Assembly: GCA_002269645.1 (NCBI GenBank)
Contig: NIVC01001484.1
Location: forward strand, 62,001-126,000
Reading direction: 5' to 3'
DNA from: Macrostomum lignano
Taxonomy: Eukaryota
DNA length: 64,000 bases
The notes beneath the pieces were generated by a model that was not told where the DNA came from, did no database searches, and worked only from the letters and a program-made list of their open reading frames with translations. Both the position numbers and the translations under genes were made by a program. Of this stretch, positions 3,851 to 28,620 are shown in pieces. Within the stretch, counting starts at the first letter, position 1. Every line of letters begins with the position of its first letter.

Positions 3851-6800
3851 TCACTCCTGTTGCTGCTGCTGCACCGGCTCTTGTTGCTGCTGCTGCACTG
3901 GCTCTTGTTGCTCTTGCTGTTGCTGCTGCTGCTGCTGCGGCTCTTCACCTCCAGCGGCCTCGTCCGGCTTGGCTGCAAATAAAAACAGTTTCTTAGAATC
4001 TCTCGTATGTGCGCGAATTCAAAACTGTTTTTTGGAATGCCGAGATGCCAATTGGCTTCAGTGGAATGCCGAGATGCCAATTGGCTTCAGTGGAATGCTG
4101 AGATGCCAATTGGCTTCAGTGGAATGCTGAGATACCAAGAGGCTTCAGTGGAATGTTGAGATGCCAGGTCATTCAACGGGTTCCCTTCAATAATTTGACT
4201 CTTACCGTCACCCTCGCCCTGCTCGCCGGCCTGCCTCTCTTCCTCCAGGTGCTTCTCCTCCTCCACCAGCTTCTGGTTGACGTCCTGGATGGCCCGGTTG
4301 ATGGCGTCAATAGCAAGAGCGTTGTCAACGATGCGCGCGTGCTCTAGCGCGCTGTCGAAGTTGCCCGCCGCGCTGGCATAGTTCTTCAGACGGACCTCGC
4401 ACTGGGCCACCTGAAAATACATGTAGTAGTAGTGTAGTAGTAGTAGTAGTAGTAATAGTAAGCTGCAACACTATGGAATTACATCCAAATATAAAAGTAC
4501 AATCCCCCGCAACGCACCAGCACGTTGGTGTTCAGCAGCCACTGGTTGTCGCCCATCTGGTTGGCGTAGCTCAGCGCCTTCTCCGCCAGCTCCTTGGCCT
4601 TGTTGAATTCCTTGAGCTCCAGGTAGCAGCGGCTGATCTCGTGGTGCAACCAGGTGGACTCCATTGGGCTGAGGCTCTTGGAGGTCTCGAGCCGCTGCTC
4701 CCACACCTGGATGGCCTCGCTGAAGTGGCCCTGCTTGGCCAGCACCCGGCCGATGTTGTCCCTGGAGCGGGCCTGCGACTCCTCGAGTTCGTGCTCCTCG
4801 CCGATCTTCTGGTCGGCCTGGTGGCTGACCAGGGCCTGGTCGTATCGCTCCAGCTCGAACTGCGAGTTGCCAATCAGCGAGTGCAGGTTGGCGCGGATCT
4901 CCTCGCGATTCTGCAGGTCTTCTGGGCTCCACTTTTCCACCGTGCGCAGCAGGCGGGTGGCCTGCTTGATGGCCGCCTCGTGCTCGCCTGCGGTCTGCGG
5001 GGGTTAGGATTGGAGTCAGAGTGAAACTACAAAGTAAAGCGGAAATGGTGATACTACAAAGACAACAGCTACAAAGACTACAGCTATAAAGACTACTACA
5101 GCTACAAAGACTATACAGCTACAAAGCTATAAATACTGCAGCTACAAAGACTGCAGCTACAAAGACTACAGCTACAAAGACTGCAGCTACAAAGACTACA
5201 GCTACAAAGACTGCATCTACAAAGACTACAGCTACAAAGACTGCATCTACAAAGACTACAGCTACAAAGACTGCATCTACAAAGACTACAGCTACAAAGA
5301 CTTCATCTACAAAGACTACAGCTACAAAGACTGCATCTACAAAGACTACAGCTACAAAGACTGCATCTACAAAGACTACAGCTACAAAGACTGCATCTAC
5401 AAAGACTACAGCTACAAAGACTGCAGCTACAAAGACTACAGCTACAAAGACTACTACAGCTACAAAGACTACAGCTATAAATACTGCAGCTACATGTACA
5501 AAGACTGCAGACTGAACGAGTAAAGTTTCTAAAAGTTTGGCTACAACTGTTTTGTTTACAAATACGCTCGATGAAAATATGAGCGAAGTTACAAACACCT
5601 GCTGAAATGTAACTTTCAAGCAACAAAATCTCGTGCCCACCTGCTTGTTGTCGATCTCCTCCAATGTGGCAATGACGTACTTGGCGGCGCTGCTTTTGTC
5701 CTTCTCGGCGGCCTCTCGCGTCGCCGATTTTTTGCGACTGTACAGCGGCTTCTGTTGCTGCCAGAACTCCGAGCGGCTGTCCAGGTAGTTCAGGCCCTCG
5801 ATGCACAGGTCCTGGATCTTCTCGCTGTGCTCAGTTTTTCGAGCCTTAGCCGACTCCTCGCGCAGCAGCTTCTCGAGGTACTCGCGATCGGCATACAGGT
5901 CTCCGAGCATCTTCTTGATGGTCTTGGAGTCCGCTGGCGCCTTGTTGCGCTGAGCTCGCTTCGGCCCGCTGTCCTCCTTCTTGGGCTTCTGGTAGCTGGA
6001 CCGGGCGGCCGGCTTCTTCTTCTGCAAGCAGAAATTGTTTGCTTCAGATTGAAGAGATTCCAATTTAAACAGATTTCGACTGTCCCATGCAGGTCAACAT
6101 GCACTTTAAAGTACAGGTAAAATCTGTTGACTCCAGCGACATCGTAGGCCAAACAGCATTGAAGCGATTCTGCCCATTCTGCAGACTCCTGAGCACACAG
6201 AAGCGCACCAGGGCTGTACGCAGGCACACACTCGTACACGCTCACGCAGGGTGTACAATGCATGTACACTCCCTTGGGTGTGAAAACTGTCCAAACTCCC
6301 AGGTTACCAAAACACAGAGCCAATCACAATGGTGCACAACATGACATTCTGAACATTGCAGGCCTGCCTTTATGCCTTGAACAAATATGATATTACGATT
6401 AGATATACACTGTACATGTAGATACATTAAAACTTTCAACTTGTTAAATTAAAGCATAAATATTGTCAAAAGCGGGTTGAGCCACGGTTGGCAATTATCA
6501 TGCGATATCAAGCAGGAGATGAATCAATAATTCAGAATTGCACGTCACTCATAAATCAATAATCCGTCAATAGTTATGTGACAAATTAAATCGGCAATTC
6601 AATTATTCTTCAACGCTTCCAGAAAGTTTTTTTTTAGAAATTACACGTGGAATTCAACAACCAAAAAGCACTTCAACGGTTGTCAACGAGCACACGAGGG
6701 TGTAGCATAGGCAGCTTCTTTCACTTCTAAATCATCCAAGTGGCCTTACCGTTAGCTGCAAAATGGGATGCGATCAATGAAATTTAAATTAATATTGTAC

Positions 6801-9800
6801 TCATACTCAAATAAGCCAAAAATATCAAATCTTCAGCAAAGATGGCAAAACTTCAAATTAAGCAAAATCTTGAATGGTCTTGTCGAAGTTTAGAAATCAG
6901 TGGTAACTATGCGGTGTTCGGGTTTCGGGTTGGGTTTTTGGTCAGGTTTCGGGTTGGGTTTTGGGTCAGGTTTCGGGTTGGGTCTTGGGTCAGGTTTCGG
7001 GTCAGGTTTCGGGTTGGGTTTTGGGTCAGGTTTTGGGTTGGGTTTTGGGTCAGGTTTTGGGTCAGGTTTCGGGTCAGGTTTCGGGTCAGGTTTTGGGTCA
7101 GGTTTCGGGTCAGGTTTCGGGTCAGGTTTTGGGTCATTTTTCGGGTCAGGCTTTGGGTCGGGTTTCTGGTCAGGTTTCAGGTCAGGTTTCGGGTCGGGTT
7201 TCGGTTATTTTTAGGGTCAGGTTTCAGGTCAGTTTCCGCGTCAGGTTTCGAGTCGGGTTTCGGTCATTTTTAGGGTCGGGTTTCGGGTCGGGTTTCGGGC
7301 CTGGGGTTAAGTTTTGGAATTCCTAGGAGTGCCTAGAGATGAAGGCATGCTGACTTACGAGAGCCTAATTGAGCTGATAGGTGAAGCTACAGGGGTATAA
7401 AGTACTCTGACTACTTTGCTCCCTCTTCCTAAGTTTCTCCACTTTAAGAATAAAAATTAACGGGGAAATTCTACTGGAATGGAACTGAGTAGTATATTCC
7501 GGGTGTAATTTACATTTATAGGCTTTGCAAAGCTTGCAAATTAAAATTGGCAGTTATGCAAGGGTCCTTGCAGAGTAAACTGTTGGAGTGGGCCGAGTGC
7601 AATGAGCAAATTACCTCATTAGACGAGCCATCAGTCTGCAACAGTGCAAATTCACCAAAAATGCATTGAAATGAAATAGCAGCACACTGGGTAGGCATGC
7701 ACCATGACTGTTAGTAGCAATTAGTAATATAGACGTTTCATAGCAACAAGACCTTGAGAGTCGAATGCCTTTGCTACTGTCTAGATTAAAAATACCACTG
7801 AATCTAAACACGGATAATGATTTAAGCCAAGAACTAATTTAAATATGAAAATAAGTATGGGCGTTGATACTACTGATAGTAATATACGCATTGCATGTTG
7901 ACCTGCACCCAAAAGCGAACTGTATAGGTAAGCAAAACGCCACGTACCGCTGAAGCAGCAGGGCGCTGCACATTTCTGGAAAATTTTCCAAGAAACAAGG
8001 TTTCGTGTCCTTCTACTTGAGGAGTCCTTGGTTGCGCCATAGACAAATTCTGTCTATAAAAATCCACTGAAGACTTCCCAACCTTGCTTCCCAGTTTGGC
8101 AGGATTTTTTTAGTTTCAGCGTCCTGCTGCTTCAGTTTTGCCCGCGCCAAATCCTTGGCAAAATATTAAGCTTCAGCGCAGAATTAAGAGGCTAATTTTC
8201 TATCAACATTTTAGTTGCTAGGCGGCTCCCGGTCTCAGAGTCTTAAGCTGTGCGCGCTGAGACCCGGGCAACCAGCTGACCTGATCGCTCATGGGTGCCG
8301 CGTGGCTTCTTCGGCCCGTCTGACCCGCGCCTCCATCCTGCTTTGCCTCTGAAAACTTCAAGCAGAAACGTGTTGTTCCCCCGGGGGAGAAGCTTAGAGA
8401 ACAAAGCGTCGCTACTACTCACTCCGCATTATTAGCAGTAGTATATTAACAAAAAATATTCCAACACGCAAATAATTAGGAATAAACTTCATTCAAAAAG
8501 TGTGGATGGTTGATCCGTGTTGATGAAAGTTGGGTGCTTAAATTGTTAGTTTATGAAAAATACTACTGAAAATGCAAGCCAAATAATAGTAGTATATTAC
8601 AATAATTTAAAGAATACAAATTTACCTCCTCAGCTGCGTAGAAAAACGACAGGTCACCGTCGGATCTCAATTTGATGACGGACGGGTCTGGAATGCAGGG
8701 CAGGGAAGCGATTCGATAATTAAAAATGCTTTTATCTTTACTATGAGTAGAGCAGTCAGGATATTGCTTGCGGCCACACCCACCTCCGACACTGTTATTG
8801 ATGGCCTCCTCGGCCTTCTGGATGCCCAGCCGGAACTCCTCCATCTCCGGGCGCAGCTTGTGGCCTCGGTGGTAGAACACCAGCGCGTTCTCAAAGTCGC
8901 CCTTGAAGTACAGAACTTCGGCCTTTTGAAATATTCCCTGGCGGAGAATAATAAGATAGACATTGTGGCGGATGGTTTCAAAGTGCCTCAAAGTTTCTTG
9001 ATAAAATAGGTATTTTTTTTAAATATGAAACAATAAAAATGATTTATAACATATGATATTTAAAGTTCACCTTGTGAAAGGCGGCGTCCTCCTTTAGGCT
9101 CTCCTCAGCATCGGCCAGGGCCTTGGCGATGTTGCCCTCATTGAGGTAGCACTTCGAACGATTCACCAGGCAGTACTGATCGCCTGGCTTCATTTCTAGT
9201 GCCTAAAATAAGTATTGGTGTTAAAATGTCAATATATATATTTTTAAACCAAACATGATCGCATAGATACAAATAAAATTAGTAAAATAAATAAAATACT
9301 ATTTTTAGTAAAAATAGACAATCAGGAAAATGCCTTATTTAACTAATATATTTCCTTTTGACTTCTTATAAAACTCATAAGCATGCATCATTTTAGAATT
9401 ATCGTTGAGAACATTTATTTATATAAATGGCCAAAATTTTCTTCAATTTGAAGTTTATGTCATGTTATGGTTTTAAAAAATAATTATATAAGTATCAAAT
9501 AATTACTATATAAAACTTATTTTTGCAATATTTAAAATTCTAACGAATTGATAAAATGGATTCATTTCTTCCTTCTTTTGCAGGCTTCCACTGCCTCTAA
9601 ATATAAAAGAGATACTATTGAAATATTAAAAAAATCTTCAATAAGTAATATCTAAAACTGTTCAATGCTACAGAAAATCAGTTAAAATGTTGTCATACTG
9701 CCTGAATTTCTATACCTGGGTGACATGTTCTGTGTAAAAAATATAGTTAGATAATATAATTGCCTCTGTGAAACTGCCGAAAACTTTATGTAGTAGAAAT

Positions 9801-10008
9801 TTTATAGCCGTTTCAGTTTAAAAAAAGTAATAAAACAACAGTTTACGCCAGCTGCAGGCTTAGTTCTTACCTGTGTGTAACATTCGATTGCTTTAAGAAA
9901 GCTTTTGTTTCGGAACTGAGAATCACCTTCAGCGCGGTAGATTTCAAATGTACTCTTTGGAATCTTACCGTGCTCTGACTCAGAGCCTGCATCGTCTTGT
10001 CGCGGCAT
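3851..10008 (-). CDS. ODAD4: TTC25/ODAD4, outer dynein arm docking complex TPR protein; 8 exons, ~556 aa
   Basis: Exons 10008-9871, 9202-9071, 8937-8784, 8687-8626, 6021-5641, 4994-4518, 4410-4206 and 3972-3851, all GT-AG and in phase (1671 nt). Motifs [55 protein letters not shown] and [17 protein letters not shown] match TTC25. Q/E-rich tail ends at TGA 3851-3853. Confidence 0.93.
4031..4165. repeat. Short 29-bp tandem repeat in TTC25 intron 7
   Basis: TGGAATGCCGAGATGCCAATTGGCTTCAG, about 4 copies. Confidence 0.85.
5050..5505. repeat. 15/30-bp minisatellite (CTACAAAGACTACAG) in TTC25 intron 5
   Basis: Tandem copies; gives the [10 protein letters not shown] tail of ORF 5119..6063. Confidence 0.95.
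6915..7305. repeat. 12-bp minisatellite (TCAGGTTTCGGG) in TTC25 intron 4
   Basis: Degenerate tandem copies. Confidence 0.93.
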
Positions 10009-11315
10009 TTTTGTTGTCAAGCCTTACAATAAAAGTGGCTATCTATAGGTACAGTATATACCGAACGGACAAAAATTGCGATGGAAATGAAAATTGAATT
10101 GCACTGAAACGATAGTAGAAATGTGTAAGTGTCATGGATACGAAAAGTAAGTTTTAATCTGAATTCGAGTTGCTAAACAAAGTGTTTTACTAGGACTACA
10201 AAAATAAGAAAAACCTAATTTAATGCAATTTTTTGTTTCCAGTAAGACTAATTTGTTATAACCGTCATGAAAAATTGTTGCGCGACATTCACGAGATTGA
10301 TTAGAAATAATATACACCCAGATATATGCCCAACGTTAATTTGTTAATTTCAATCCAGAAGTTTAGACCTGGACTCAGACTGAAGTAATATTTCCTGATA
10401 AATTTTGATAGTATCAACATGCGGTTTTAGCTAGATCTGAGATATTTTCGCGTTCACTAGCTCGTGTAACTGCATGTATATGCATGTATACTACAGTGGT
10501 CCTTGTGATAAAATGCATCCATATCCACGTCTTTATACATGTATATCCATGACTATGCAGATATGTACATATTCGAAAAAATATATGAACACAGGTTCAT
10601 CTCTTCATGAGCCTCTTAATTTTGCTAAAAGTGCCTTATGTTTTGATCGAGTCCTAGCCGATCGAGTCCTTAGGAATGTTCCTAAAGTACGTGGGGAAGT
10701 TATCTCTTTAAAATACAAAAAACTTAGGAACAGTTCCGAACAAAATTAAACTTATAAAATATAGCGATACAACTTTAAGCAGCTTTGGCCTCGAGATCAG
10801 AGCTTTTAGCGCATTTAGCTGAAAAATACTATTTATTGCTATAGAGTCAGTGCATGCCATGCACACACACATATACACTGCATTCACTGCAGCTGCATCT
10901 ATGTAAAAGTAAAAATGAATAATCACACTGGTTGTAATTAGTTTTTTTCATTAATTTATTGTTTTACATACGATGCAGACTATTAAAATTTACTTCTAAA
11001 CACTGCGCTTTATTTTATTGTCTAATAAATAAATCCAGCCTTTTAAAAAAATTTTGTACTCGTAGACTTGCTATAATTTAACTCACGTGATAGAGAACTG
11101 TACCATTTAAAAAAATTAAACTACTACATGAAAAAGTAGTTATTATTTACGCATGTACATATTGAGCAGATCAATCAAATGACGCGGCACCAGAGTAAAA
11201 AACACCCCAGTTGGAAAGATCATATAATATTTCCATTTAGCAAATTACATTTAGGAATTGAACATTTAATAGCCTTTCAGCAAGTATATTCGAAAATTGA
11301 CTCTGAGCAGATTGG

Positions 11316-11540
11316 CTACACATCTCCAGAAGGCCTGCCGGTGTCTCTGACATGCTGCAGTTTCTTCCTGGCCGCCAGGTAGGCGAGGCACTCCGAGCAC
11401 AGCTGCTGCAGTTTCTCGCCCTGCTGCGTCATCCGAGGACTCGCCTGAAGCTGCCGATTCAGCTGTTCCAGGTATTGGGCATCGGTGCGATGCTCTCTGC
11501 TGTACCTGGCTTTTATCTGCTGGTTTTTTGCAGGTGACAT
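11316..11540 (-). CDS. Small ORF (74 aa) or exon homologous to the central helical segment of TTC25
   Basis: ATG 11540-11538, TAG 11318-11316. Residues encoded by 11486-11367 align without gaps to TTC25 residues encoded by 5892-5773 at 19/40 identity. The 5' structure is uncertain. Confidence 0.6.
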   Translation of the reverse strand: MSPAKNQQIKARYSREHRTDAQYLEQLNRQLQASPRMTQQGEKLQQLCSECLAYLAARKKLQHVRDTGRPSGDV

Positions 11541-12289
11541 CGACAGACAGCAGCGTCCGCGGTAGGTCAGCAGTTATCCACAATGATAAGCCCGGGGTTC
11601 TGGGCCTCTGCTATATGAACTCTCAGGCCTACATTTTGACAATGGGGATTTTGTGACGCAGGCCCCCAATCCAGTGTCCCATATGCATTGTCCTGCGTTC
11701 ACTGCACGTTCAAGCGCGAGCCTGAAGGGTTGTGTAGAATGCCACCATTGTCCCTAAACTGGTACCTGCACTTCTAGTTGAAGCTTGCAAGAAGCTGCCG
11801 GGACCTCTTCAGTAAACATGAACACAGAAAGTCTCGATGTCATCAATGAAGTTAACAGTTTCATTGTTGCTGGCAATCCGCACAATTTCTTTTGTGCAAA
11901 TTTACACTGGCCTGTACGGCAAGCAAGACTGCTGTGCGTGAGCCAACAACAGGCTTATTAAAATGAGGAAGTTTTTTTAAACACTCAATGCTATTGGCAG
12001 TTGCAGCTTCCGCTGAATGCCTTTGGCAGACAATGCCAAGGCTGGCAACCAGGAGCTTCTCTGAATGAACTTCGTAGAGGCACCAAAACTCAATGCTGTT
12101 AGTTGATGGAAGGCTTCCTAAAGGCAGTGATTTTTGCTCTCGCCACTTACTTAGCTCTCTTTTTTTCCGTTTTAGCCAGTTTTCAATGGGAGCCTTCGGT
12201 TGCTGCAGCAAATTGAGCTGGCAGTCAAGCAGCAGCCAAGCAGTCATGTCCATTCCGCCGACCCCTGAGTTCGTTTACAAGAAAAGTTA

Positions 12290-12368: not shown

Positions 12369-12464
12369 GCGCTCCTCTGGCGTCAAGATCCATGACGCCA
12401 TGCAAGCAAGCAAGCTTCTGCATACAAGTTACTCCGCTCATCTGCTGTACCCCCTATCTGCTAG

Positions 12465-12765
12465 GGGGTTGTAGCCTAGTGGCTAGAGAGTCGGACTCAG
12501 GACTTGAAGGTCGGGGGTTCGATTTCCGATCCAAGTGGAACAATCTGGTGTCCTTGAGCAAGACACTTAACTCTGCATTGCTTCAGTTCGACCGGCTGTA
12601 AAATGTTAAAGGCTGTCTTAGCTCTGAGGGAGTGTGTAGCGACCCCCCAGTCCTTGGACAGAACAGCCGTATGCAGCCTTCAGATGCGCCGCGCAATAGC
12701 TGCGGCTGAGCTGTCGGTTGCACATCTGGCCCAATTGTGGCAGGTGTAATCGATTATTATTATTA
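12465..12765 (+). mobile_element. tRNA-derived SINE with CORE (MIR-like) central domain, copy 1
   Basis: A box TAGCCTAGTGG, B box GGTTCGATTTCC, then GTGTCCTTGAGCAAGACACTTAACTCT...CTTCAGTT...CTGTAAAATG, a unique 3' body and an (ATT)n tail. An inverted second copy lies at ~22985-23298. Confidence 0.8.
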
Positions 12766-13207: not shown

Positions 13208-14857
13208 CTACTTGTCCCCAGTCCTGTTCATGTTGCGCATCATGGCAAAGATGTTGCCCTCCCGCGCTCCGCCGGACTTCTCCGTCACCCAGGCGGAGTC
13301 CATGAACTCGGACGTTGACCAGCGGTCCACGGCTGATTGAACAAGCAGGTGGCTCAGAGCGGCTCGACACTCGGCGCTGAGCTCCGAGCAGGTCTTGCAG
13401 CGGTTGCAGAGTCGGCCGTAATTGAAATCTTTGATTTCGTCGATGAGGTCGGACTCGGACCGGCTGGAGTAGGGCAGGCTGCCGTGCACCAGGCTGAACA
13501 TGATGATGCCCAACGACCAGACGTCGCATTTCTCTGTGTAGCTGCTGCACTTCACGATTTCTGGCGCCTGCATGGATTTGGCGGGTTGGTTGAATGGATG
13601 ATTGAAGTCACTGCGGCAGGAATTTCTACCATACCTGATACCTCCTCATGAGATGGCTGAGAGTAGTTAAGTCACAATGAAACCAAATGGGCTTCGAATT
13701 TGAGAGCTGCTCATACACACAGAGGCGCAGCTACGGAGGACTTGCTATGGTGCAAGGGGCCATCATATCTCATTCTTGCGCATGGTAATTGACGGAGTAT
13801 AATGGTCCGTCCCTATCGTGACTAGCGAACTTCATTACTTGCTTGCCCAATGTTTCCCCGCATCGCCATGAAAGCCATGACTATCCGCACCTGATAAGCC
13901 GGGGTGCCGACGTTGTCGCCCAGCGACTGGTCGGAGACGCGCAGTTCAATCGACAAGCCGAAGTCGGTGAGCTTCACCACAAACGGGCACGGGTGGGTAG
14001 CCGGTGACCCCTTGCGGTCCACAGCGGCTTCGCCTCGACGTCGGCAGAAACGCGGACTGCTGCCGTCGGTAGTTTTAGCCGACGGGATTCGTTTCAGCAG
14101 GCAGTTGTGCAGCTTCAGGTCGCGGTGCACAACCCGGTGGCGGTGCAGGTAGCTCAGCGCGCTGCCCAGCTGCCTCAAGGTGCACCTGGCGTCCTGCTCA
14201 GCGAATTGAGTCCGACGCTGCAACTCGTCGGCCAGGTTGCCGCCGTCGCACAGCTCCATGAACAGGTAGCAGCTGTTCTCTGACTCGTAGATGGCGTCCA
14301 CGGCGACGATGTTGGGGTGCCGGTGCCGGCTCAGAACGTGGATTTCGTTCTCCCAGGACTTGCCGTACTGCGTCTTTGGGTCCTTCTTCTTCACCATCTG
14401 AGGCGGCGGAGAGTGAAACAAATAAATAATCCATTAAAAAACAGTAGTAGGACTACAAAGAACGCAACTCTAAGAAGCTTCACTCCTGGTGCTTTGGTGG
14501 GCGCCACTGTCCCTACCTCGACCTGGGCTGGTAGATAGCACGTCGAACTAAGTGGGGGAGGATTTGGGGCCGCAGACAGTCCCCATCTCTTTGGCCCCTC
14601 TCTGACGTGCACTTTGCCCAGGCCAAACTGCATTGAGAAAGGAGAATTCCAGCTTGGCTTCATTCTGACAGCTGATTTACCTTCTTTACGGCGAATTTGT
14701 GCCCGTCGGAGATTCTCAGCGCCAGCAGCACGCTGCCGAAGGCGCCCTCTCCGAGCTTTTCGCCGAACTGGAAGGTCTCCTCAAGCTGCTGACAGGAGTC
14801 GATCTTAACAAATGGCACCACACTTGCCGTGTCGTCAGTGCTCGCCCATTTGGCCAT
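13208..14857 (-). CDS. STK33: STK33-like Ser/Thr kinase (CAMK group); 3 exons, ~347 aa
   Basis: Exons 14857-14681, 14397-13891 and 13567-13208, GT-AG, phase 0. Motifs GEGAFG, AVKK, HRDLKLHN, DFG, GTPAYQ|APE, DVWSLG. The N-terminal VPFVKID...LEETFQFG and C-terminal NIFAMMR resemble STK33-specific flanks. Confidence 0.78.
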
Positions 14858-16929: not shown

Positions 16930-18136
16930 TCAGCCCTTCCTGTGCACGATGCCCAGGCCGCAGTTGTACTCCTGCCTGGTGATCCACTTGGACTGGAAAG
17001 TGCTCAGCGAGGCCAGGATAGAGCCAACGACCCACATTGAGTACTTCCGCTGGGGCAGCGCCACCACTTTGATCTTGACGTCGGAGGGCGCCAGGCCGGC
17101 GATCTCCTTCTGCAGGCGGTCGGCGATGCCGGGGTACAAGCTGGAGCCGCCGCTGAGCATAATGTTTGAGCACAGGTCCCGTCTGATATCCACGTCGCAT
17201 TCGGTGACGCAGTCAAACACTGTCTGGTGGATGCCCACAGGCTCTAGTCCGAGATCTGACGGCTGGGACAGCGCCTCCGGACAGCGGAAGCGCTCGCTGC
17301 CGACGCTGATCAGCTGACCGTCGGGCAGCTCGTAGCTCTTCTCCAGGGCGTTGCTGGTGGCCGCAATGCGCGCCTCGTGCTCGAAGTCGAGCGCCACGTA
17401 GCACAGCTTCTCCTTGATGTCGCGGACGATCTGAAGTTGAATTCGCGCTGTTTGAGTAAATCCACAAGCTTTTCAGTGAGACTGCGACCAGCCAGATCAG
17501 TTTGGGAGATGGCTTTGGCTATCGGCTTGCCCGCATCGATGGGAACCGCGTCTGTAGAGCCCTCGCCAGAGTCCAGCACGATGCCGGTGGTGCAGCCGCT
17601 GACGTACAGCGACAGCACGGCCTGGATGGCGACGTACATGGCGGGCGTGTTGAAGGTCTCGAACATGATCTGCGTCATTTTCTCGCGGTTGGCCTTGGGG
17701 TTGAGCGGCGCTTCAGTGAGCAGTATGGAGTGCTCCTCGGGGCCACGCGGAGCTCCTTGTGGAAGGTGTGGTGCCAGATCTTCTCCGTGTTTGTCACAAC
17801 GCCGTGCTCGATCGGATACTTCGGTTCCACGAAGCCGCGTCTCTTCTGCGCCTCCTCGCCGACGTAGGTATCCTTCTGGCCTATGCCGAAAGTAACGCCC
17901 TAACCAAGTTCGGAAGTTCGATTGCTTATAGTTTTAGCCTTTAATTCTAAGTTATAGTAATTGCTGTAATCTTGGGCATGTGAAGCTGTAATGTAAAACA
18001 AAAACTTATATTTGTAATTCGGCTTCCTTACAAGGCTAGGGAAAATTTTCCTAGGCCTTTTCTCGCCCACAAAGCCGGCCTTGCAGGTGCCGGATCCGCA
18101 GTCAATCACCAGAACGGCCGAGTTGGCATCGGACAT
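16930..18136 (-). pseudogene. Actin-like gene with two frameshifts and several deletions (probable pseudogene)
   Basis: Actin motifs [69 protein letters not shown]. One intron (acceptor 17900-17901). Frameshifts: 1-nt loss in the G-run at 17739-17742 and at ~17431 (TTTAERE missing). WDD is also deleted, and the expected codon-41 donor is missing. Confidence 0.85.
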
Positions 18137-19193
18137 TGTCAGATCGGCTGGTCACTTATAGCCATCTGTTACTTGGCGCGAGCGAGCGAACTTGTCTGTG
18201 CTCACAAAGTCTGACAAAAAATAGGATTTATTTTCATAAAAGTGTGCAAAGCCCGAGCATCTTCTAACGACTCAAGCGCATACTCAAGACAATGGGTGGC
18301 GTACAGAAGTTTAAGCGAATGCTTCTACTTGAGACTTGGCAGCCTAATGCTTACTAAATAGTTTAGCAAATGCTCACTACTTGTACGAATTTACATAGTT
18401 TTCGAATATGTAATCTCCCTTAGTTGTTAGCCCCGACGCATGTACCGTCGCAGGGAAATTTCTTCGGTGCAAGTTTCACGAGAATCATTTGAGCTGTTAT
18501 TCTGAAATCAATCACATGTAGCTATCTACCTTAGATAAATAGAAACAGCTCGTTTTTAGTGTAGTAGAAGAGGATCTTAGAGCTAGAACTTTAGTCTATT
18601 GTGAAGACGGATGTGGTTTGTAAAGATTAGTAAGCTATAAAGTTGTGAACTCTTAGCTACAGACCCAACCCAGAGACCAATACACAGAGAGTATGTCTTG
18701 TGCAATAGGCACGCAACACTCTTTCCTGTCAAGTTTTTTGTCCGTGGACAAATTTTCTAATCAAATTCTACCGCACGTCAGAAAGTCTTGCACTTACGAC
18801 CAAAGCTTCACTTCTCCAGCTTAAAATAACAAACAAGTTTAGAAGAGGCTTATCTGCTAAGAAGGCGTGCACGCAGTCTGGTTCAGTTTGTCTGCTGGGT
18901 GGGTGCCTGGGTATTCAATGGAAAGGGGAACTCTCGACTTTGTATTGCATAGCTATGGAACGAATGTACATGCAGTTCTACGTACAACAGTCTACGTACA
19001 TTTGACCCCCACCCCAATAAAATTCTCTCCTCTCTAGCGAAATAGCTCGTATTAATGTACACCCTTGCCTCAGAAGAAAACCCACAGCGTTATATCTGCG
19101 CAGACAGACTTTAACTGAAGCAACAAGGTACCAAAACTGTTATTTAGTTTTGCTTAAATCCGTCTCAAGTGTCTTAAGCAGTTCGTGAGACAA

Positions 19194-22130
19194 ATGGCAA
19201 ACCGTTTTGATCCTCAACCCGTGGATATTGACGGCGACTTCGGTCAAGTTGCAAGAGCTGCGGCACAGCACCTCAGCCAGTCTCTGGCTCAAACCGAATC
19301 GCTAGACCGAGAGCAACAGCTGCAGTTGCTCAAGCAGGTGCTGCTCAACAATCCTCTGCTTCTAGCCGTCCTGGAAGATCCCGAATGGCAGCGCAGCATT
19401 CGAGAGGCGGCTGTCCCGGTGCCGGGCGAAGCTCACCTTGGCGTCACCAGTGAGATCGCTCAGAATGTGCAGCCAGGTAAGCTTAGCTGTAAAGCATTCT
19501 GTGCTGTTAAACTGCGCACATCTAATATTGCAAAGGTTATTACCCCGAAACTTTATTAACCAAGCTAAAATAGTCATGGATGCATAGGATTTCAAACTTG
19601 TACATGTACGACTATAACACAATATCCATTCACCTTACTACAATTGACAGGAAATGTTCTAAACTTGTCCTACTACAAGCTTCCGCACAAGGTGGTGGTG
19701 GAGACCTGCAGCTACTCTCCCGATGAGAACAAGCTGGCCGTTACTGCCATCCACTATGGGAGGCTGGGCCTGCTGAGCCCCGTCACTGTGCTGCGTGAGG
19801 ACTTCCAGCTGCCTTGCAACGGCTCCAGTGTGTGGCTGCACACATTCCCGAACTCGGTGCTGTACTCAAACAAGGAATCGCTGTCTCGGGCACTCAGCCG
19901 CCTCGGTGAGAGACAGCACTATCCAACCAGCAACAACGCGCACACTTTGGCCGTGTGGTGTCGAGTTCGGGACTCGAGAAACCTGGACAGCGTTCGGGTT
20001 CCTCTGCTAGACGACAAACGGGAAGAGCTGCACCAGCTCATGCCGGCTGATCACATAGATGTATCGATCGGAAACCAGCAGGTGCACGCCGTCATCGCTT
20101 CGATCGAGTCTCTTGACGAAGTCAACGAAAGAAAAGTACTTTCTGTAGTGGCTCTGTCGGAAAGTCTACAGGTCAACGGAAATGCGTTTCAAACTTTCGG
20201 TAGAACTATGCTCGCTATAAACCCGAATGAGCGCGTTGAAAAACTGCAGCTGGAACTGAAACGCACCAATGTGGAGAAGAATGCGGAAATATTCAACAAC
20301 ACTCACCTGTGCCAGGAGTGTTCGGATTTGATGGCGATAAACTTTTTGGCAACAGGAACGGCCGTCGAGCCCAAGGCGCACGCTCGTTTTACCATCCATG
20401 TCAGCGAACTTCGTTCTAACGAGCTGATTTTCTACCAAGGCCGTATTCACTTCGTGATGAAGGTGGACCAGCCGGAGCGTGACGACCAAACCTATCAGAT
20501 TCACACGGTTTGTTACGCGCCGCTAAACTTGCAGACGGCGCCGAAGACGACCGAAATTCGCCTGCTCGTCAACCTGCGTGAGGCGGGCAAAGTGCAGCTG
20601 GTGCGGCACGCCGAGCCCGACCTGCAGTGTCCAGTTTTGTTGAACTGGAAATCCATGGATTCGCCGTTGATTACTACGCAAGCTGTAGAAGATCTGAGTC
20701 AACTTCAGCCAGGTGACGCTGTCTCAATCCAGGTCCAGGAGTGTAAAGCCAAGTATCCACTGTCGCCACTAATGCCTGGCCTGCACGCTATTGTCAAGAG
20801 AAACAGCACCAGTGATGGTTTTTTGGAAGTGATCTGCTTCAACGCGGGCGGCTCCGGCTTGGTTGAAGTCAAGCGCCTGCCAGTGAGCGATCACAAATTC
20901 AGCAAGATAAACTTCAACGTTAGCCGTGATTTGCTTTCGGACGGAGAGGATCCTTTGAGACGAGCGGAGGTTCGTCTTGGCACTGGTCAGTACTGCATCG
21001 CTTGGAACAACTCGCGTGACTTCGCTCGCTGGTGCTGCGTCAATCACAAGTCCAACGCTTCGTCGCACATCGGAGTAGTGACCAAGCCGGCAGATCTGGC
21101 CACGCTTTCATCTATGCAGCAGTCGGCGAAAGTGAGGCTGCAGCATCAGATTGCTGACCAAAGTGTGCTTCGCGAAGTGAGTCTGATCGATGTGAGCTCT
21201 CCGAACCAATTCACCAATGTTTTGAAGTTGAGCCTGATTAACGTCGATTGGTCAGTTAAGATGGTGCAAATTGTTAAGCTTGAGAACACCAGCCAGCTTC
21301 AAAAAGTACGACGGGTGCCTTACAATGGCAAGTCGGTAAGCGAAGCGCAGGCTCGGATATTGAGCGAAACAATCAACATTCTACTCGACTTGTCCCTTGC
21401 CAATGCCTCTGATCGCCAGCTGGGCTGCGGCCTTTCGGACCAAACTTTCTGTACCTGGCTGCGAGGCTTGAAGCAGGCCGGTCTGGTCGAGCTGCCTGCT
21501 CTGCTGTCGGCCGATGCTGCAGCAGACATTGGCTCGGGGCAAGACCTGGAACAAGTTGCAGATCTGTACGAGCTCAGCCAGTGGGATCATGTAGTTATTG
21601 AGAGACCTCAAGCACCTCAACTACACATGCTAGTTTTGGAGTTCAACGTTGAGTCCGGGGTGCTCTGTGGTTACACCTATGCACCAAGGCCCCAACAGGA
21701 TCCTGGCAAGCGCCTGGACATGTACATGTACTTTCCGCCGGACAAGGCCCCCTATCCAATGCACAAGGTCATCCGACGAACTCCAATAGACACCGACGCG
21801 AGTTCCGAGCTGAGCGCCAGTCTTGCCGCGGGCTCCAACTTCGCCGACAATGTGGCGGCCTGGGCCCAGCTCTGCGCGCTCGAATTGGACTCAAACCTTC
21901 TGCCGCAGTTAGACGACGATCTCAACAAATTGCTCAAGCTGATGCTCAGGTTTGCTCTCCGCTACGCTTCGGGCCAATATCCCGACGATGGCTCTCTGCA
22001 GACTTGCCGCGTCATCCTCGCTTCGGGTGGGTTCGCCAGATCACTGAAGAACGACCTGCGCTGCGAGGCCGCTTCACGACGGTTGTATTTTATTGTCCGG
22101 CTGATGGCTCGCATGGTTGAGTCGGAATAA
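19194..22130 (+). CDS. Multi-LRAT (permuted NlpC/P60, H-box/NC-like) repeat protein, paralogue A; 2 exons, ~920 aa
   Basis: Exons 19194-19476 (G|GTAAG) and 19651-22130 join in frame. LRAT-like motifs QPG|NVLNLSYYKLPH...AIH...RALSRLGE...NNAHTLAVWCR and LQPGDAV...LHAIV...RRAEVRLG...Y..AWNNSRDFARWC. Confidence 0.8.
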
Positions 22131-22984: not shown

Positions 22985-23298
22985 TAATAATTACAATCGT
23001 TACAATTTATTGCACCTGCTTTAATTGGGCCAGATGTGCGACCGACAGCTCATCCGCAGCTATTGCGCGGCGCATCTGAAGGCTGCGTACGGCTGTTCAG
23101 TCCAAGGGGGGGGGTCGCCACACCCTCAATTACCCCAGCTACAGTGTAATGCTGCACCCATTTTACAGCTTGGTGAACTGAAGCAACGAAGAGTTAAGTG
23201 TCTTGCTCAAGGACACCAATTGTCCTCGTTGGTTCGGGAATCGAACCCCCGACCTTCAAATCGTGAGTCCGACGCTCTGACCACTAAGCTACAACCCT
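22985..23298 (-). mobile_element. CORE-like tRNA-SINE, copy 2
   Basis: Reverse complement of the 12465 element: A box TAGCTTAGTGG, B box GGTTCGATTCC, GTGTCCTTGAGCAAGACACTTAACTC, and the same 3' body (CAGATGCGCCGCGCAATAGCTGCGG...). Confidence 0.82.
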
Positions 23299-24815
23299 CT
23301 TAAATTTATTAATTTAGTGAGAACATCCTTTTACGTAGTCATAACTGTCTTGCTTATTTGTTTCTTGTTGGCTGCCTTGCTTTTTACGATCTACGAGTAT
23401 TAGAACCCAAATCGAATTAAGGTTCATTCACTCCGTCATGAATTGAGCCGACAAAAAGCACGACGGGATGTACCAATGTGATTTTTTAATAGTACAAAGC
23501 CACGTGATCGCAGAAAAATGGGCCTTTTTTATTGTGATGTTAACAAAATGGTCTTGAGCGTATAGTGGTGGCTCAGAGTTCAAGAGTAACTTCCCGTCCA
23601 TCTGCTCTTCGAGTTCCTGGCCTACACGAACTGTCTTTGAACTCGATTTTTGAGTAGGCAAAGCCGCTGGGCCAAGTTGCTACAAGTTTAGAGCTGTTAG
23701 AGCTTTTGGGTAGCTTTTAGTAGCGCTCTGGGGCGAGTTTATTTCTCGTATTATGTTCAGGGCTTCCTACTCAGCGTACAGTGTTGTCTATGGTTGATGT
23801 CGAAGATACCAAAGGGAAAAGTACAAAGACAACCAATAGATTAATTTCTATACAGGAAGCTACTATATAATCCCTTTCTACATGATAAAATCCCTACATC
23901 ATTTTGGCAACCGGTACGTGTAGTTAAGACTTATTTTGGCGCCGCCGCAGGGCACTCGATTAGCTATGCGCCAGCTCTGGCAGATACAGCAAGGATTGGC
24001 TTCATGGACTTCTAAAACACTGGGAAAAGGACGTTGCAGGCGTCTCTTACGCATTTTCTCTGTCGAAACAAGGAAAATTCTTTCTTAACAGTAACTCTTT
24101 GAACCTGAACTGGGCTTTAGAACAGTTATTCAGCATCGGCGGTCACTGTCGAAATTGTAGTTTCTGACCTTTTGAGAAATCACATCAATAGTTCTGAGTA
24201 ACAGAATCGATTAGTGCGCGTCAATAGCATAAACTCTAATTAAAGTAGGATTGTAAGGTATGAAAGAAGTTACACTGTCTAGCTTGTACGAGCTACGTGC
24301 CTGTTTTACAGACTAAATAAACTGAAATTCTCAAAACCTCAGACCTTTCTCATACCTTACACGACGCACTCAATAATAGTCAGCCTTAACTCTCTCTCCG
24401 AGAGGGCGCTGTAGTGCTTGGTTAGACAGAGACTGCGAGCCTATGCACAACCAGATACTGCAAGATATGTACAGGCAACTATGCACTTCAAACTGAATGC
24501 TTTGGACAGAAAACAGTGAGGGACAGAGGGTTGAGAGCTGTGCTTGTCTGTCTGGGGCTATGCGACAGCGTACATTGTAAGCCTTGTGCAAATCTCTCAA
24601 TGCTTATCTACTGAGGCGCACGCGCTGGGCTTAGTCCAATTTAGACAACACTTGCCTACAAGTCTTAGATGTTTCTTGGTGCTTTATAATCTTATATTTT
24701 ATATTATAATTATTTATAATCTGCAGTACTGTGACCTTGTAGAAAAACAAAACTACACAGCTGCAGTCCAAAGCGGTGTTGCAACCAGAAGCTCTTAGTA
24801 TAGCAAGACTCGAAA

Positions 24816-27649
24816 ATGGCCGCCCCTGCCGACCTCTCGCAGCTGACGCAGCAGCTGGAGTGCTCAGTCCGCGAGCTGGAGAAGCTCACTCTGATGACCA
24901 GAGAGCAGCAGCTGTGGCTGCTCAAGCAAGCCATAATTAGCAAGCCCTGGCTGCGAGCCGTACTGGAGGACGCCTGCTGGCAGAGGAGCATCCGTGAGGC
25001 TACAACGCCTGTGCCAGACGAGCGTTCCGAAAAAGTAACCAGCGAGCTGGCCAAGACCATCAGACCAGGTAAGAAGCATACACTTTTCTAGTAACAAATG
25101 GTTTGAGTTAAAAAATCTAGGTTTTAACCAATCGACGTACTGGTATTTAACTGGAAATTTTAGGCAACGTTCTAAACTTGTACTACTACAAGATTCCGCA
25201 CAAGGTGGTGGTGGAGACCTGCAGCTACTCTCCCGATGAGAACGAACTGGCTGTTACGGCTATCCACTATGGGAGGCTGCGCCTGATGAGCCCCGTCACG
25301 GTACGGCGTGAGGACTTCCAGCTGCCTTGCAACGGCTCCAGCGTGTGGCTGCACACATTCCCGAACTCGGTGCTGTACTCAAATGAGGAATCGCTGTCTC
25401 GGGCACTCAGCCGCCTTGGTGAGAGACAGCACTATCCAACCAGCAACAACGCGCACACTTTGGCCGTGTGGTGTCGAGTTCGGGACTCGAGGAACCTGGA
25501 CAGCGTTCGGGTTCCTCTGCTCGACGACAACCGGAGAGAGCTGCACCAGCTGATGCCGGCTGATCACGTCAATGTGTCACTTTTTAACCGCGACATTCGT
25601 GCAGTCATCGTTAATGCAAAGCGTCTGGACCCGGTCAGAAAGTACATGATCCTGGATATTGTTGCCGCTACGTCAGATGTTGCTAACCTGCACGCATTCA
25701 CTAGAACATCGATCAGTCTTAATTCAAGCGATCCAATTGATCGGCTGAACCTTCAGTTCCGTAGACAGGATGTTCACCAGACTGTCGAATGCTTCGCAGG
25801 AGTCTGCTTGTCTTGGGGGTGCAGTCCACTCATGGCGATGACCTTCTCTCTCAGCGGCGTTCGCGCGGAACCAGAGCTTCGCCGAACCAGAGTCTCAGCC
25901 AGCCAGCTGGTCTCTGGAAACGTAATCGCGCACGACCACCGCGTCCAAATAGTGCTGTCCGTGCAGCGGCCAGCAGATCCTAAAACTGCGTACAATTTTG
26001 AGATTCTCGACTACCTACGGGTGAATACTGACGTGACGCAACATACTAAGCAAGTCAGTATCGTGATTGATCCAACTGAGCACGATAAAATTCAGCTGAT
26101 TCGGCACAGCGAGCCAGATCTACAGTGTCCGATACTGAGGACGTGGAAGCAGAAAGACCTGCCGTCGATCACAGAGCAGCCAGTGGCGCAAGTCACTGAC
26201 TTGCAGCCTGGCGATGCGGTGTGCATCCGAGAAAAGTCTGACGTTCATCCTTTGGAAACTAGTCTGCCTGGTCTTCACGCCATTGTGAAAGGAGTGAATG
26301 AAGACGACAGCAAAGGCTTGTCAGTTGATGTAGTCTGCTTCGGTGAAGAGAGAACGTTGTGCATCGGCGCTGTCCAAGTGCCAGAAAAGGGGCACGTGTT
26401 TAGTACACTACACTTCCAAGTCAGTGCAGAGCTGCTGGCTCCAAGAGAGCAAGCGCTACAGAAAGCGGTGGCTCGGATTGGCACCTACGGTTACTCCTGC
26501 GCCTGGAACAACTCATGCGACTTTGTTCGCTGGTGCTGCGTCAATCACAAGACCAACGCGCCTAGGCACCTAGGCGTTGTGACTGAAATCAGCCAGCTGC
26601 TCGCCCTGACCGCGCTGGGCCAGGGTCAGCTGAGATTTTCGCACGATCGCTCTGACAGCTCGGAAACGTTGCAGTTTGCCGAAGCTCGCCTTGTTGCCGT
26701 CAGCCCGTGTGGGGAGTGCATCGACCTGGCCAAGTTGAGTCTGACGGATATTGACTGGCAGCCGAACAGCGTGCAAAAGTTGACCATAACCAAGATCAGT
26801 GAAGGTAGCCGCGTGAGCCGGGTGACGTACGGCGATGAGCAAGCTGTGAGCGAATCCAAGGCTCAAATGCTGAGCGACACATCAAAAATTCTGCTCGGCT
26901 CGTCGCTAGCAAACGCCTCGGACAGACGCCTGGGCTGCGGTGTGTCGGACAGCCGCTTCTGCGCCTGGCTGCGCGGCCTGCGCCGACCCGGCCTCGCTGA
27001 ACTGGCCGCTCTACTGTCGGCTGACAGCGCAGCCGCGAGTGAGCCACCGGAAGCGAACGAACTCGTGACGGACTTCGGATGCCTGCACCGCTGGGATCAC
27101 ATTGTAATTGAGAGAGGTGAGGCCGCTCCAATTCACCTGCTGTTTGTTGAGGCGAATCCGGACACCGACTCGATTTGCGGATTCTCCTATGCGCCCAACG
27201 ACGAGCACGATCCCAGCGGCCGCTTGGACATGTATATGTACTTCCCGCCGGACCGGGCGCCCTACCCCATCGAGAAGGTGATTCAACGGGTTCCCCTGGA
27301 CGGCAATTTGAGCTCGGAGCTGAGCTCTAGCCTTGCTGCGACAGCCAACTCACCAGAGGATGCGGCAGCCTGGGCGCAGCTCTGCGTACTGGAGCTGGAG
27401 AACGACCTCGTCAAACTGCCAGCCGAACTGAGCCGGCCGCTCAAGGCGATGCTAAAATTCGGCTTCAGAGTTGCTGCCGGGCTCGGTGAATCAGGCGCTG
27501 GATCGCGCGACGCCTGCGCTAGAGGCTTGGCCTCCGCTAGCCTGAGGCGCCTGGTCTCTGCCACCTTGGAAACCGTGTCGGATGACGTCGGCAGGCGGCT
27601 GCTGTTCCTTCTGAAGCTGATTGCCAGCTTCATCGCTCCAGAGGCTTAG
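24816..27649 (+). CDS. Multi-LRAT repeat protein, paralogue B; 2 exons, ~912 aa
   Basis: Exons 24816-25068 and 25164-27649, with the intron at the same position and phase as in paralogue A (PG|N). Collinear motifs NNAHTLAVWCR, LQPGDAV, WNNSCDFVRWC, DMYMYFPPD..PYP, AAWAQLC.LEL. Confidence 0.8.

Positions 27650-27818: not shown

Positions 27819-28620
<802 letters not shown>

What the first reader, a model, noticed from the sequence alone, without database searches (positions are those of the whole stretch)
11316..11540. Stand-alone micro-ORF copying the central helix of the neighbouring TTC25
Seen: TDAQYLEQLNRQLQASPRMTQQGEKLQQLCSECLAYLAAR aligns ungapped with TTC25 [40 protein letters not shown] (5892-5773) at 19/40 identity. 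It lies on the same strand, 1.3 kb upstream of the TTC25 ATG. The frame is open and GC-rich, with AATAAA signals downstream (~11030, ~10960). Inference: an old partial duplication kept at the protein level. It could be a TPR-less microprotein that mimics or competes for an ODA-docking interaction, or one exon of a larger diverged paralogue.
Basis: partly seen in the sequence, partly recalled or inferred. Interest (0 to 1): 0.7.

Follow-up and report, generated by a model that had tools for sequence, protein, structure and literature searches.

The report
Orphan copy of ODAD4 helical hairpin
A 74-codon open reading frame just upstream of a flatworm's cilia gene ODAD4/TTC25 is a genuine, old, partial copy of that gene's central helix-loop-helix and is intact in two genome copies, but sequence alone cannot say whether it is an expressed small protein or a slowly dying relic.

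Summary
The window is Macrostomum lignano contig NIVC01001484.1 (62001-126000). The ORF at 11316-11540(-) matches ODAD4/TTC25 residues 190-248 (38% over 60 aa, 19/40 ungapped). It beats every shuffle, and an ODAD4 profile built without M. lignano sequences also finds it (E=1.5e-6).

The ORF is a solitary copy of the helix-loop-helix between the two TPR blocks. No other ODAD4 exon remnant lies nearby. It sits in an unannotated 3.2-kb spacer between an STK33-like kinase gene and ODAD4.

A second subgenome copy carries the same ORF intact: 9 substitutions, no indel, pN/pS 0.36. Keeping the frame through about 60% residue change is unlikely under neutral decay (about 6e-4; range 6e-2 to <1e-5). 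That points to past selection on a translated product.

Recent evolution cannot be told from neutral, and amino-acid change runs 3.6 times faster than in neighbouring genes. GC3 does not discriminate. No transcript, protein or homologue was found. Nine of 13 family-invariant residues are lost, including LLGELY and FWRQQKP.

Verdict: a lineage-specific partial duplicate, either a young, fast-evolving small protein (about 0.45) or a relic (about 0.35). The "ODA-docking mimic" idea is untested and weakened. The "exon of a larger paralogue" idea has no support.

The parts
11316..11540 (-). 74-codon ORF (ATG 11538-11540, TAG 11316-11318). Equals NIVC01001484.1:73316-73540, complement.
   Evidence: Searches give the ORF. 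It is intact with the same start and stop in subgenome copy L002 8466-8690. Its codon-usage score is the highest of 66 stop-free segments in the spacer.
11358..11537 (-). Stretch homologous to ODAD4 residues 190-248. The profile-supported core is 11361-11489.
   Evidence: tblastn in both directions. Family HMM without M. lignano sequences, E=1.5e-6. hhalign E=1.4e-5. Shuffle test.
5764..5940 (-). Parent segment: the central helix-loop-helix inside the exon coding ODAD4 residues ~162-296.
   Evidence: In the AF2 model of M. lignano ODAD4 the segment is helices 197-222 and 226-250, flanked by low-confidence linkers 165-196 and 252-270. No Pfam family covers it.
3851..10008 (-). ODAD4/TTC25 gene (PAA67409.1, Mlig006729g2), CDS range.
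   Evidence: Best PDB relatives are the ODAD4 chains of 7RRO and 8J07.
11265..11270 (-). ATTAAA, a candidate poly(A) signal 46 nt after the stop, kept in both subgenome copies.
   Evidence: This is only a motif match; no 3'-end data were available.
11009..11019 (-). Overlapping AATAAA motifs about 300 nt after the stop. Another lies at 10955-10960.
11296..11549 (.). 254-nt indel-free block between the two subgenome copies. It brackets the ORF closely, running from 9 nt before the ATG to 20 nt after the stop.
   Evidence: Only about 3% of 225-nt windows in this spacer are indel-free.
11574..11576 (-). In-frame stop 11 codons upstream of the ATG. It limits any 5' extension of the frame.
   Evidence: the stop-to-stop segment starts at 11573.
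13208..14857 (-). Upstream neighbour: an STK33-like CaMK-group kinase gene, annotated as 347 aa with its own stop at 13208.

Best explanation
The ORF is a lineage-specific partial duplicate of the helix-loop-helix module that links the two TPR blocks of ODAD4/TTC25 in Macrostomum lignano. A piece of about 180 nt from the middle of one ODAD4 exon was copied into the spacer 1.3 kb upstream of the parent gene.

The copy then diverged fast, with about 60% of residues changed, but kept its reading frame. Today it is a 74-codon ORF bounded by an ATG at the 5' edge of the homology and a TAG 14 codons past its 3' edge.

I think it most likely is, or was until recently, a single-exon gene for a small, fast-evolving, all-helical protein. 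It keeps the hydrophobic face of the hairpin (YLExL ... L..LC.E.L.YL..R). It has lost the TPR blocks and the two strongest ODAD4 motifs, so it cannot do ODAD4's job. If it acts, it would do so as a free hairpin that binds whatever that retained face binds.

Shown: homology, position, solitary nature, intactness in two subgenome copies, loss of motifs, predicted helices.
Inferred: past selection on a translated product.
Not shown: transcription, translation, any binding partner, present-day constraint.
For: Homology is real and does not depend on the M. lignano parent sequence.

Most of the divergence lies on the copy's lineage. At 39 family-conserved columns the copy differs from the consensus at 28 and M. 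lignano ODAD4 at 15. The copy keeps the consensus where ODAD4 lost it only once.

Under neutral decay to this divergence, the chance of no stop and no frameshift over the 59 homologous codons is about 6e-4. The range is 6e-2 to <1e-5, using indel:substitution ratios bracketing the 0.14 measured between the two local copies.

Second codon positions are better kept than first positions (41/59 vs 27/59 identical, Fisher p=0.015), the pattern of conservative replacements.

Comparison with the second subgenome copy:
- It has the same ATG and TAG, 9 substitutions (4 synonymous, 5 not) and no indel.
- Indels occur 10 nt upstream of the ATG and from about 25 nt after the stop.
- Only about 3% of 225-nt windows in the spacer are indel-free.
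- A control 137-codon ORF 400 nt upstream is broken by about 7 indels.
- The overlapping alternative frame gains a stop in the other copy.

AF2 predicts helices 20-33 and 39-67 (pLDDT 76-88). They map onto ODAD4 helices 197-222 and 226-250, a module flanked by disordered linkers in the parent.

Lack of annotation is not evidence against expression. The GenBank annotation kept only TransDecoder-positive 'coregenes' and dropped transcripts judged non-coding (PMC5730564). TransDecoder's default 100-aa minimum is my own knowledge.
Against: No evidence of transcription or translation could be obtained.
- No gene call with this product exists in any assembly on record.
- No homologue turned up in the word-indexed search.
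- The exhaustive search of 1.84 billion representatives gave one hit, a spurious tandem-repeat protein.

Recent evolution cannot be told from neutral.
- pN/pS is 0.36 from 9 changes (p=0.12).
- The nonsynonymous count does not differ from the intergenic expectation (p=0.16).
- pN of 0.029 is significantly above the 0.008 of neighbouring exons (p=0.013).
- The overall rate of 4.0% is about the intergenic 4.8%.

GC3 of 0.69 matches local genes, but neutral decay from a parent with GC3=0.85 would leave 0.64-0.76.

Three other blocks of 238-254 nt in the spacer are also indel-free.

I saw no convincing splice acceptor, Kozak context or promoter upstream of the ATG when reading the sequence.

Nine of 13 family-invariant residues of the segment are lost.
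Confidence: 0.45

Rival explanations
1. It is a non-functional relic. In one version, a larger (perhaps whole-gene) tandem duplicate of ODAD4 evolved under selection for a time, then died and was mostly deleted in this indel-rich genome. In another, a fragment was copied once and never used. Either way, the 74-codon ORF is what happens to be still open.
For: - The substitution rate in the ORF is close to the intergenic rate, and pN is 3.6 times that of neighbouring genes.
- The strongest ODAD4 motifs are lost.
- There is no transcript, gene call or homologue anywhere.
- The GC3 level fits simple inheritance from the parent.
- Other indel-free blocks of similar length exist in the spacer.
- The genome turns over fast by indels (PMC10733133), so the other exons could have been deleted.
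Against: A fragment that was never used should have lost its frame (joint probability about 6e-4).

The version with earlier selection inside a full-length paralogue explains the frame. It then needs three coincidences: an ATG at the 5' edge of the homology, an indel-free block that just brackets the ORF in both copies, and no trace of any other exon.
Confidence: 0.35
2. It is part of a larger transcript rather than a gene of its own. It could be an unannotated terminal exon of another gene (for example an alternative 3' exon of the STK33-like kinase). It could also be an upstream cistron or uORF in a long or polycistronic ODAD4 transcription unit, a unit type common in M. lignano.
For: - It is on the same strand as both neighbours.
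- M. lignano has many polycistronic precursors resolved by SL trans-splicing (PMC5730564).
- GC stays near 0.52 for about 250 nt upstream of the ATG.
Against: - An in-frame stop lies 11 codons upstream, and a 1-nt indel between the copies lies 10 nt upstream.
- I saw no pyrimidine-rich acceptor near the 5' end when reading.
- The kinase has its own stop at 13208, and a SINE-like insertion lies in between.
- The candidate upstream exon (donor at 12150) is frame-broken in the other copy.
- Poly(A)-like motifs and 1.3 kb of 30%-GC DNA separate it from the ODAD4 ATG.
Confidence: 0.15
3. The similarity is a chance match between two Q/E/K/L-rich helical sequences.
For: Both segments are helical and rich in L, E, K and Q. 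The exhaustive single-sequence search did not return ODAD4s at database-wide significance.
Against: The composition-corrected E-value is 7.5e-8. None of 5000 shuffles against ODAD4, and none of 300 against the whole six-frame window, reached the observed score (z about 10). Independent profile hits give E=1.5e-6 and 1.4e-5 at the matching ODAD4 positions. At the DNA level, 51 nt match at 72.5%.
Confidence: 0.01

Closest known systems
[quoted passage not shown]
   Same: The ORF matches ODAD4 residues ~190-248 (helices 197-222 and 226-250 in the AF2 model). It keeps D207, Y210-L211-E212, L214, the GEK turn, the L..LC.E.L.YL..R face and the same 13-residue loop length.
   Different: It has no TPR blocks. 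It lacks the LLGELY and FWRQQKPxYAR motifs and keeps 4 of 13 invariant residues. It is 74 aa against 556 aa, and its last 14 residues are unrelated to ODAD4.
microProteins (miPs): small single-domain proteins derived from larger multi-domain proteins that interfere with their complexes, such as Id proteins and plant LITTLE ZIPPER (named from my own knowledge, not tested here)
   Same: It is small, it is related in sequence to one module of a larger complex-forming protein, and it lacks the rest of that protein.
   Different: No expression, interaction or dominant-negative effect is known. The copied module is not an established interaction domain, and its most conserved residues are gone.
Partial gene duplicates: gene relics or young genes born from gene fragments
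   Same: A short internal piece of an exon was copied next to its parent, diverged fast, is restricted to one lineage and is unannotated.
   Different: A plain relic would have lost its frame. This one kept it through about 60% residue divergence and in two subgenome copies.

Membership tests
ODAD4/TTC25 family | N-terminal TPR block (about residues 20-140) | tested here: not met
   Pfam places TPRs at ODAD4 22-124. tblastn and a full-length ODAD4 HMM find no such sequence near the ORF.
ODAD4/TTC25 family | C-terminal TPR block (about residues 270-510) | tested here: not met
ODAD4/TTC25 family | Invariant central motifs LLGELY and FWRQQKPxYAR | tested here: not met
   The ORF reads 'RYSREH' and 'KKLQHVRDTG' at those positions. 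Only D207, L211, L242 and R245 of the 13 invariant residues are kept.
ODAD4/TTC25 family | Central helix-loop-helix (YLEKLL ... GxxIxDLxxxGLxYLDxR) | tested here: met
   Profile E=1.5e-6 and 1.4e-5. Predicted helices coincide with those of ODAD4.
microProtein (miP) class | Small protein related to one domain of a larger multi-domain protein and lacking the other domains | tested here: met
   74 aa, homologous only to ODAD4 190-248.
microProtein (miP) class | Is expressed and binds the parent protein or its partners | not testable with these tools
   No RNA-seq, Ribo-seq, proteomics or multimer modelling was available. No gene call is on record.
Retrocopy / processed pseudogene | Copy of the mRNA extending to its 3' end, with a poly(A) remnant | tested here: not met
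   Only an internal 180-nt piece (residues 190-248 of 556) is present. Nothing 3' of it is copied, and no A-tract follows.
Protein-coding gene under purifying selection | Reading frame kept and dN/dS below 1 across copies or species | tested here: inconclusive
   The frame is kept against the parent and between two subgenome copies. However, pN/pS of 0.36 rests on 9 changes (p=0.12), and pN is 3.6 times that of neighbouring exons.

The most novel reading that the evidence does not exclude
The ORF encodes an expressed, Macrostomum-specific microprotein born from the ODAD4 hairpin. It binds an ODA docking-complex component, or ODAD4 itself, and tunes docking-complex assembly. That would make it an animal ciliary example of a microProtein regulator encoded next to its parent gene.
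Probability: 0.07. Interest if true: 0.7.

Novelty: new member of a known kind. Interest (0 to 1): 0.3.

Why it matters
If the ORF is translated, it would be a dated, clean case of a new small protein made from an internal fragment of a conserved ciliary gene. It would sit beside its parent in a transgenic and RNAi-tractable flatworm with three subgenome copies to compare. It would also give a handle on the uncharacterised central hairpin of ODAD4, a primary ciliary dyskinesia gene.

If it is a relic, it is an ordinary by-product of a duplication- and indel-rich genome. Its main lesson is then that an open, GC-rich frame with real homology is not enough to call a gene.

Tried and rejected
- Word-indexed protein search with the ORF: nothing.
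- Exhaustive phmmer against 1.84 billion representatives: one hit, P0124. It is a tandem-repeat protein matching 'HVRDTGxSG' ten times and was rejected as spurious.
- Exact-product look-up of the ORF: not on record.
- Pfam on the ORF: only sub-threshold hits (Raf1_N and others), ignored.
- Foldseek of the single-sequence AF2 model against the PDB: best E=0.76 (Tad1 helices). This is meaningless for a helical hairpin.
- GC3 and codon usage as proof of coding: the ORF scores highest in the spacer. The neutral-decay simulation shows the parent's GC3 of 0.85 would leave 0.64-0.76 anyway, so I dropped it as evidence.
- Upstream exon with the GTAAGT donor at 12150: rejected, because its frame is broken in the other copy.
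- Remnants of other ODAD4 exons: none found by tblastn or full-length HMM.
- An 'AFWR' in another frame near the ORF's 3' end looked like the lost FWRQQKP motif. It lies 9 codons out of place, is unsupported by nucleotide alignment, and reads as a stop in the other copy.
- Third subgenome copy: ODAD4 g3 lies at a contig start, so its upstream spacer is missing.
- Rebuilding the annotated kinase protein to reach that spacer gave more than 200 possible splice models.
- The bacterial-type promoter/terminator scan is irrelevant for a eukaryote.
- ODAD4 papers gave no contact map for the central hairpin.

Full report
**Where the window comes from.** The ODAD4-like exons of the window retrieve PAA67409.1 (Mlig006729g2) of Macrostomum lignano as by far the best protein hit. 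The contig that encodes it, NIVC01001484.1 of assembly GCA_002269645.1, is 100% identical to window 1-20008. Window position x equals contig position 62000+x. In the GenBank annotation ODAD4 occupies window 3851-10008(-). The next gene upstream on the same strand is a 347-aa CaMK-group kinase at 13208-14857(-), whose best solved relative is STK33. The ORF in question lies in the unannotated 3.2-kb spacer between these two genes.

**Checking the observation.** The ORF and the quoted 19/40 ungapped alignment are exactly as described.
- The match extends to 60 residues: ORF 2-61 against ODAD4 190-248, 38% identity, one single-codon gap.
- It is the only hit of the ORF in the window (E=7.5e-8).
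- The Smith-Waterman score is 95. Shuffles against ODAD4 give 34.9 +/- 5.0. The best score of a shuffle anywhere in the six-frame window is 45.4 +/- 4.8, and no shuffle reached 95.
- A profile of this ODAD4 segment from 119 other animals, with M. lignano excluded, finds the ORF at E=1.5e-6. hhalign gives E=1.4e-5 at the matching positions.

So the homology is real and does not depend on the neighbouring paralogue. The ORF scores best against M. lignano ODAD4 (40.8 bits), followed by fish ODAD4s (about 38 bits). It shares the lineage-typical Cys of 'DLC' with M. lignano ODAD4. This points to a duplication within the flatworm lineage.

**What was copied.**
- In an AF2 model of M. lignano ODAD4 built on 34 orthologues, the segment forms helices 197-222 and 226-250 with pLDDT of 71-78.
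- Low-confidence linkers (165-196 and 252-270) flank it, between an N-terminal TPR block (21-138) and a C-terminal one (272-512).
- No Pfam family covers the segment.
- The ORF modelled alone gives helices 3-16, 20-33 and 39-67, with the last two at pLDDT 76-88. These map onto the parent's two helices.
- The copy is therefore the whole hairpin module and nothing else. tblastn and a full-length ODAD4 HMM find no other ODAD4-like piece outside the real gene.
- The copied piece is internal to one exon (residues ~162-296), so this is not exon shuffling.
- It is not a retrocopy, because nothing 3' of residue 248 is present.

**What was kept and what was lost.** At 39 columns conserved across ODAD4s the ORF differs from the consensus at 28, while M. 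lignano ODAD4 differs at 15. Only once does the ORF keep the consensus where the parent lost it. Most change therefore lies on the copy's own lineage.
- Kept: D207, the YLExL stretch, the GEK turn, the loop length and the hydrophobic face of helix B (L..LC.E.L.YL..R).
- Lost: both strongest family motifs, LLGELY and FWRQQKPxYAR, and 9 of the 13 invariant residues of the segment.
- The last 14 residues of the ORF have no counterpart in ODAD4.

**Was the frame maintained by selection?** I simulated neutral decay of the parent segment until it reached the observed amino-acid divergence.
- That needs 30-86 substitutions, depending on how much change is assigned to the copy.
- The chance of no stop is 0.11-0.33.
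- The indel:substitution ratio measured between the two local copies is 0.14, and I bracketed it from 0.07 to 0.3. The chance of no frameshift is then 0.19 down to 1e-9.
- The joint value is 6e-4 for the central case. It ranges from 6e-2 under the most lenient assumptions to below 1e-5.
- Second codon positions are more conserved than first positions (41/59 vs 27/59 identical, p=0.015), as expected for conservative replacements. This signal weakens if many changes belong to the parent lineage.

I conclude that a translated frame was probably under selection for much of the copy's history.

**Is it still under selection?** M. lignano DV1 carries about three paralogous subgenome copies of most loci (PMC10733133). 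The g1 copy of this locus (NIVC01001037.1, locus L002) has the same kinase-spacer-ODAD4 layout. It carries the ORF with identical start and stop, 9 substitutions (4 synonymous, 5 not) and no indel.

Evidence for constraint:
- Indels lie 10 nt upstream of the ATG and from about 25 nt after the stop.
- The spacer has 61 indel events in 3.1 kb, and only about 3% of 225-nt windows are indel-free.
- A 137-codon control ORF at 11864-12274 is destroyed by about 7 indels in g1.
- The overlapping alternative frame gains a stop in g1.

Evidence against constraint:
- pN/pS of 0.36 is not significant (p=0.12).
- The substitution rate of 4.0% is about the spacer's 4.8%.
- pN of 0.029 is well above the 0.008 of ODAD4 and kinase exons, whose pooled pN/pS is 0.21 (p=0.013).
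- Three other indel-free blocks of 238-254 nt exist in the spacer.

Present-day constraint is therefore weak at best and unproven.

**Coding signals.**
- GC is 57% in the ORF and drops to 30% right after the stop.
- GC3 is 0.69, the same as in local genes.
- The ORF frame has the best codon score of the six frames, and the best of 66 stop-free segments in the spacer.
- I do not count any of this as evidence. A neutral copy of a parent with GC3=0.85 would still show 0.64-0.76.
- ATTAAA lies 46 nt after the stop and is kept in both copies. AATAAA motifs follow at about 300 and 356 nt.
- Reading the sequence, I saw no clear splice acceptor, SL acceptor or promoter upstream.
- An in-frame stop lies 11 codons upstream of the ATG.

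**Expression and relatives.** No gene call with this product exists in the assemblies on record. The word-indexed search found nothing. The exhaustive search of 1.84 billion representatives returned only a spurious repeat protein. These databases seem to hold no other Macrostomum species, because the ODAD4 hits fall from the M. lignano protein itself straight to 46% identity. The lack of orthologues is therefore uninformative. The lack of annotation is also uninformative. The deposited annotation kept only transcripts that TransDecoder judged coding (PMC5730564), and that program's default minimum of 100 aa (my own knowledge) would exclude a 74-aa ORF.

**Interpretation.** My best reading, at about 0.45, is a lineage-specific single-exon small-protein gene born from the ODAD4 hairpin, fast-evolving and possibly under weak constraint today. 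The main rival, at about 0.35, is a relic: either a fragment of a once-functional larger duplicate or a piece now drifting. Membership of a larger transcript (kinase 3' exon, ODAD4 upstream cistron or uORF) has about 0.15. Chance similarity is excluded.

It is weakened by the loss of the segment's most conserved residues. The published bovine structure describes TTC25 only as part of a TPR/ARM solenoid bridging CCDC114/151 coiled coils, and it says nothing about this hairpin (PMC8595878).

**Comparison with known things.** The ORF is not an ODAD4 family member, since three of four defining features are absent. Formally it fits the sequence definition of a microProtein, but none of the functional criteria could be tested. 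It is a new member of a known kind: a partial gene duplicate that is either a candidate young gene or a gene relic. The question would be settled by existing M. lignano RNA-seq and poly(A) data, peptide searches, and the syntenic spacer in other Macrostomum genomes.

Noticed in passing
window 12463-12750 and 23009-23300 (tRNA-like part 23227-23299, minus strand): A ~290-nt element is present twice in inverted orientation at 82% identity. One copy contains a tRNA-Val(CAC)-like sequence that passes the Rfam tRNA threshold. It is probably a tRNA-derived SINE, and one copy sits between the kinase gene and the micro-ORF.
   Followed up: partly
window 19644-22130(+) and 25178-27649(+), with leader ORFs 19185-19559 and 24816-25091: Two tandem paralogous long ORFs of 828 and 823 aa, annotated as a 920-aa gene with no Pfam domain. 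Each is preceded by a related short ORF. The only Pfam signal is a sub-threshold LRAT/NlpC-P60-type hit at residues 434-467.
   Followed up: partly
window 16930-18136(-): An actin gene lies upstream of the kinase (Pfam Actin E=5.7e-46).
   Followed up: partly
whole window, e.g. 1928-2863, 5054-5494, 27819-28636, 35856-37250, 56736-58781: The density of mini- and microsatellite arrays is very high (40 TRF rows with score of 200 or more). The 15-nt array at 5054-5494 lies in an ODAD4 intron and makes the mechanical ORF 5119-6063 run on as '[10 protein letters not shown]...'. The strong GC skew at 46-60 kb coincides with such arrays.
   Followed up: partly
L003 (NIVC01001904.1:1-5605), protein P0121: The third ODAD4 copy (g3) starts at a contig end. 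Its annotated protein has a garbled N-terminal part that looks like frame errors, so this is either an assembly problem or a degenerating copy. Its upstream spacer, and hence a third micro-ORF copy, could not be retrieved.
   Followed up: no
window 11319-11345(-), alternative frame: The +2 frame over the 3' end of the ORF reads 'QAFWRC', which recalls the lost ODAD4 motif EFWQQQKP. It is 9 codons out of place, is not supported by nucleotide alignment, and reads 'QAF*RC' in the other subgenome copy. It is probably chance, or possibly the trace of an old frameshift.
   Followed up: yes
window 13211-13560(-): The C-terminal exon of the annotated STK33-like kinase, used as a protein query, found no hit at all in the 5.8-billion-protein index, although the gene is annotated in GenBank. 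This is unexplained.
   Followed up: no
window 3851-4100(-), ODAD4 C-terminus: M. lignano ODAD4 ends in a poly-Q/E tail ([20 protein letters not shown]...) whose length differs between the g1, g2 and ML2-assembly proteins (556, 557 and 548 aa).
   Followed up: no
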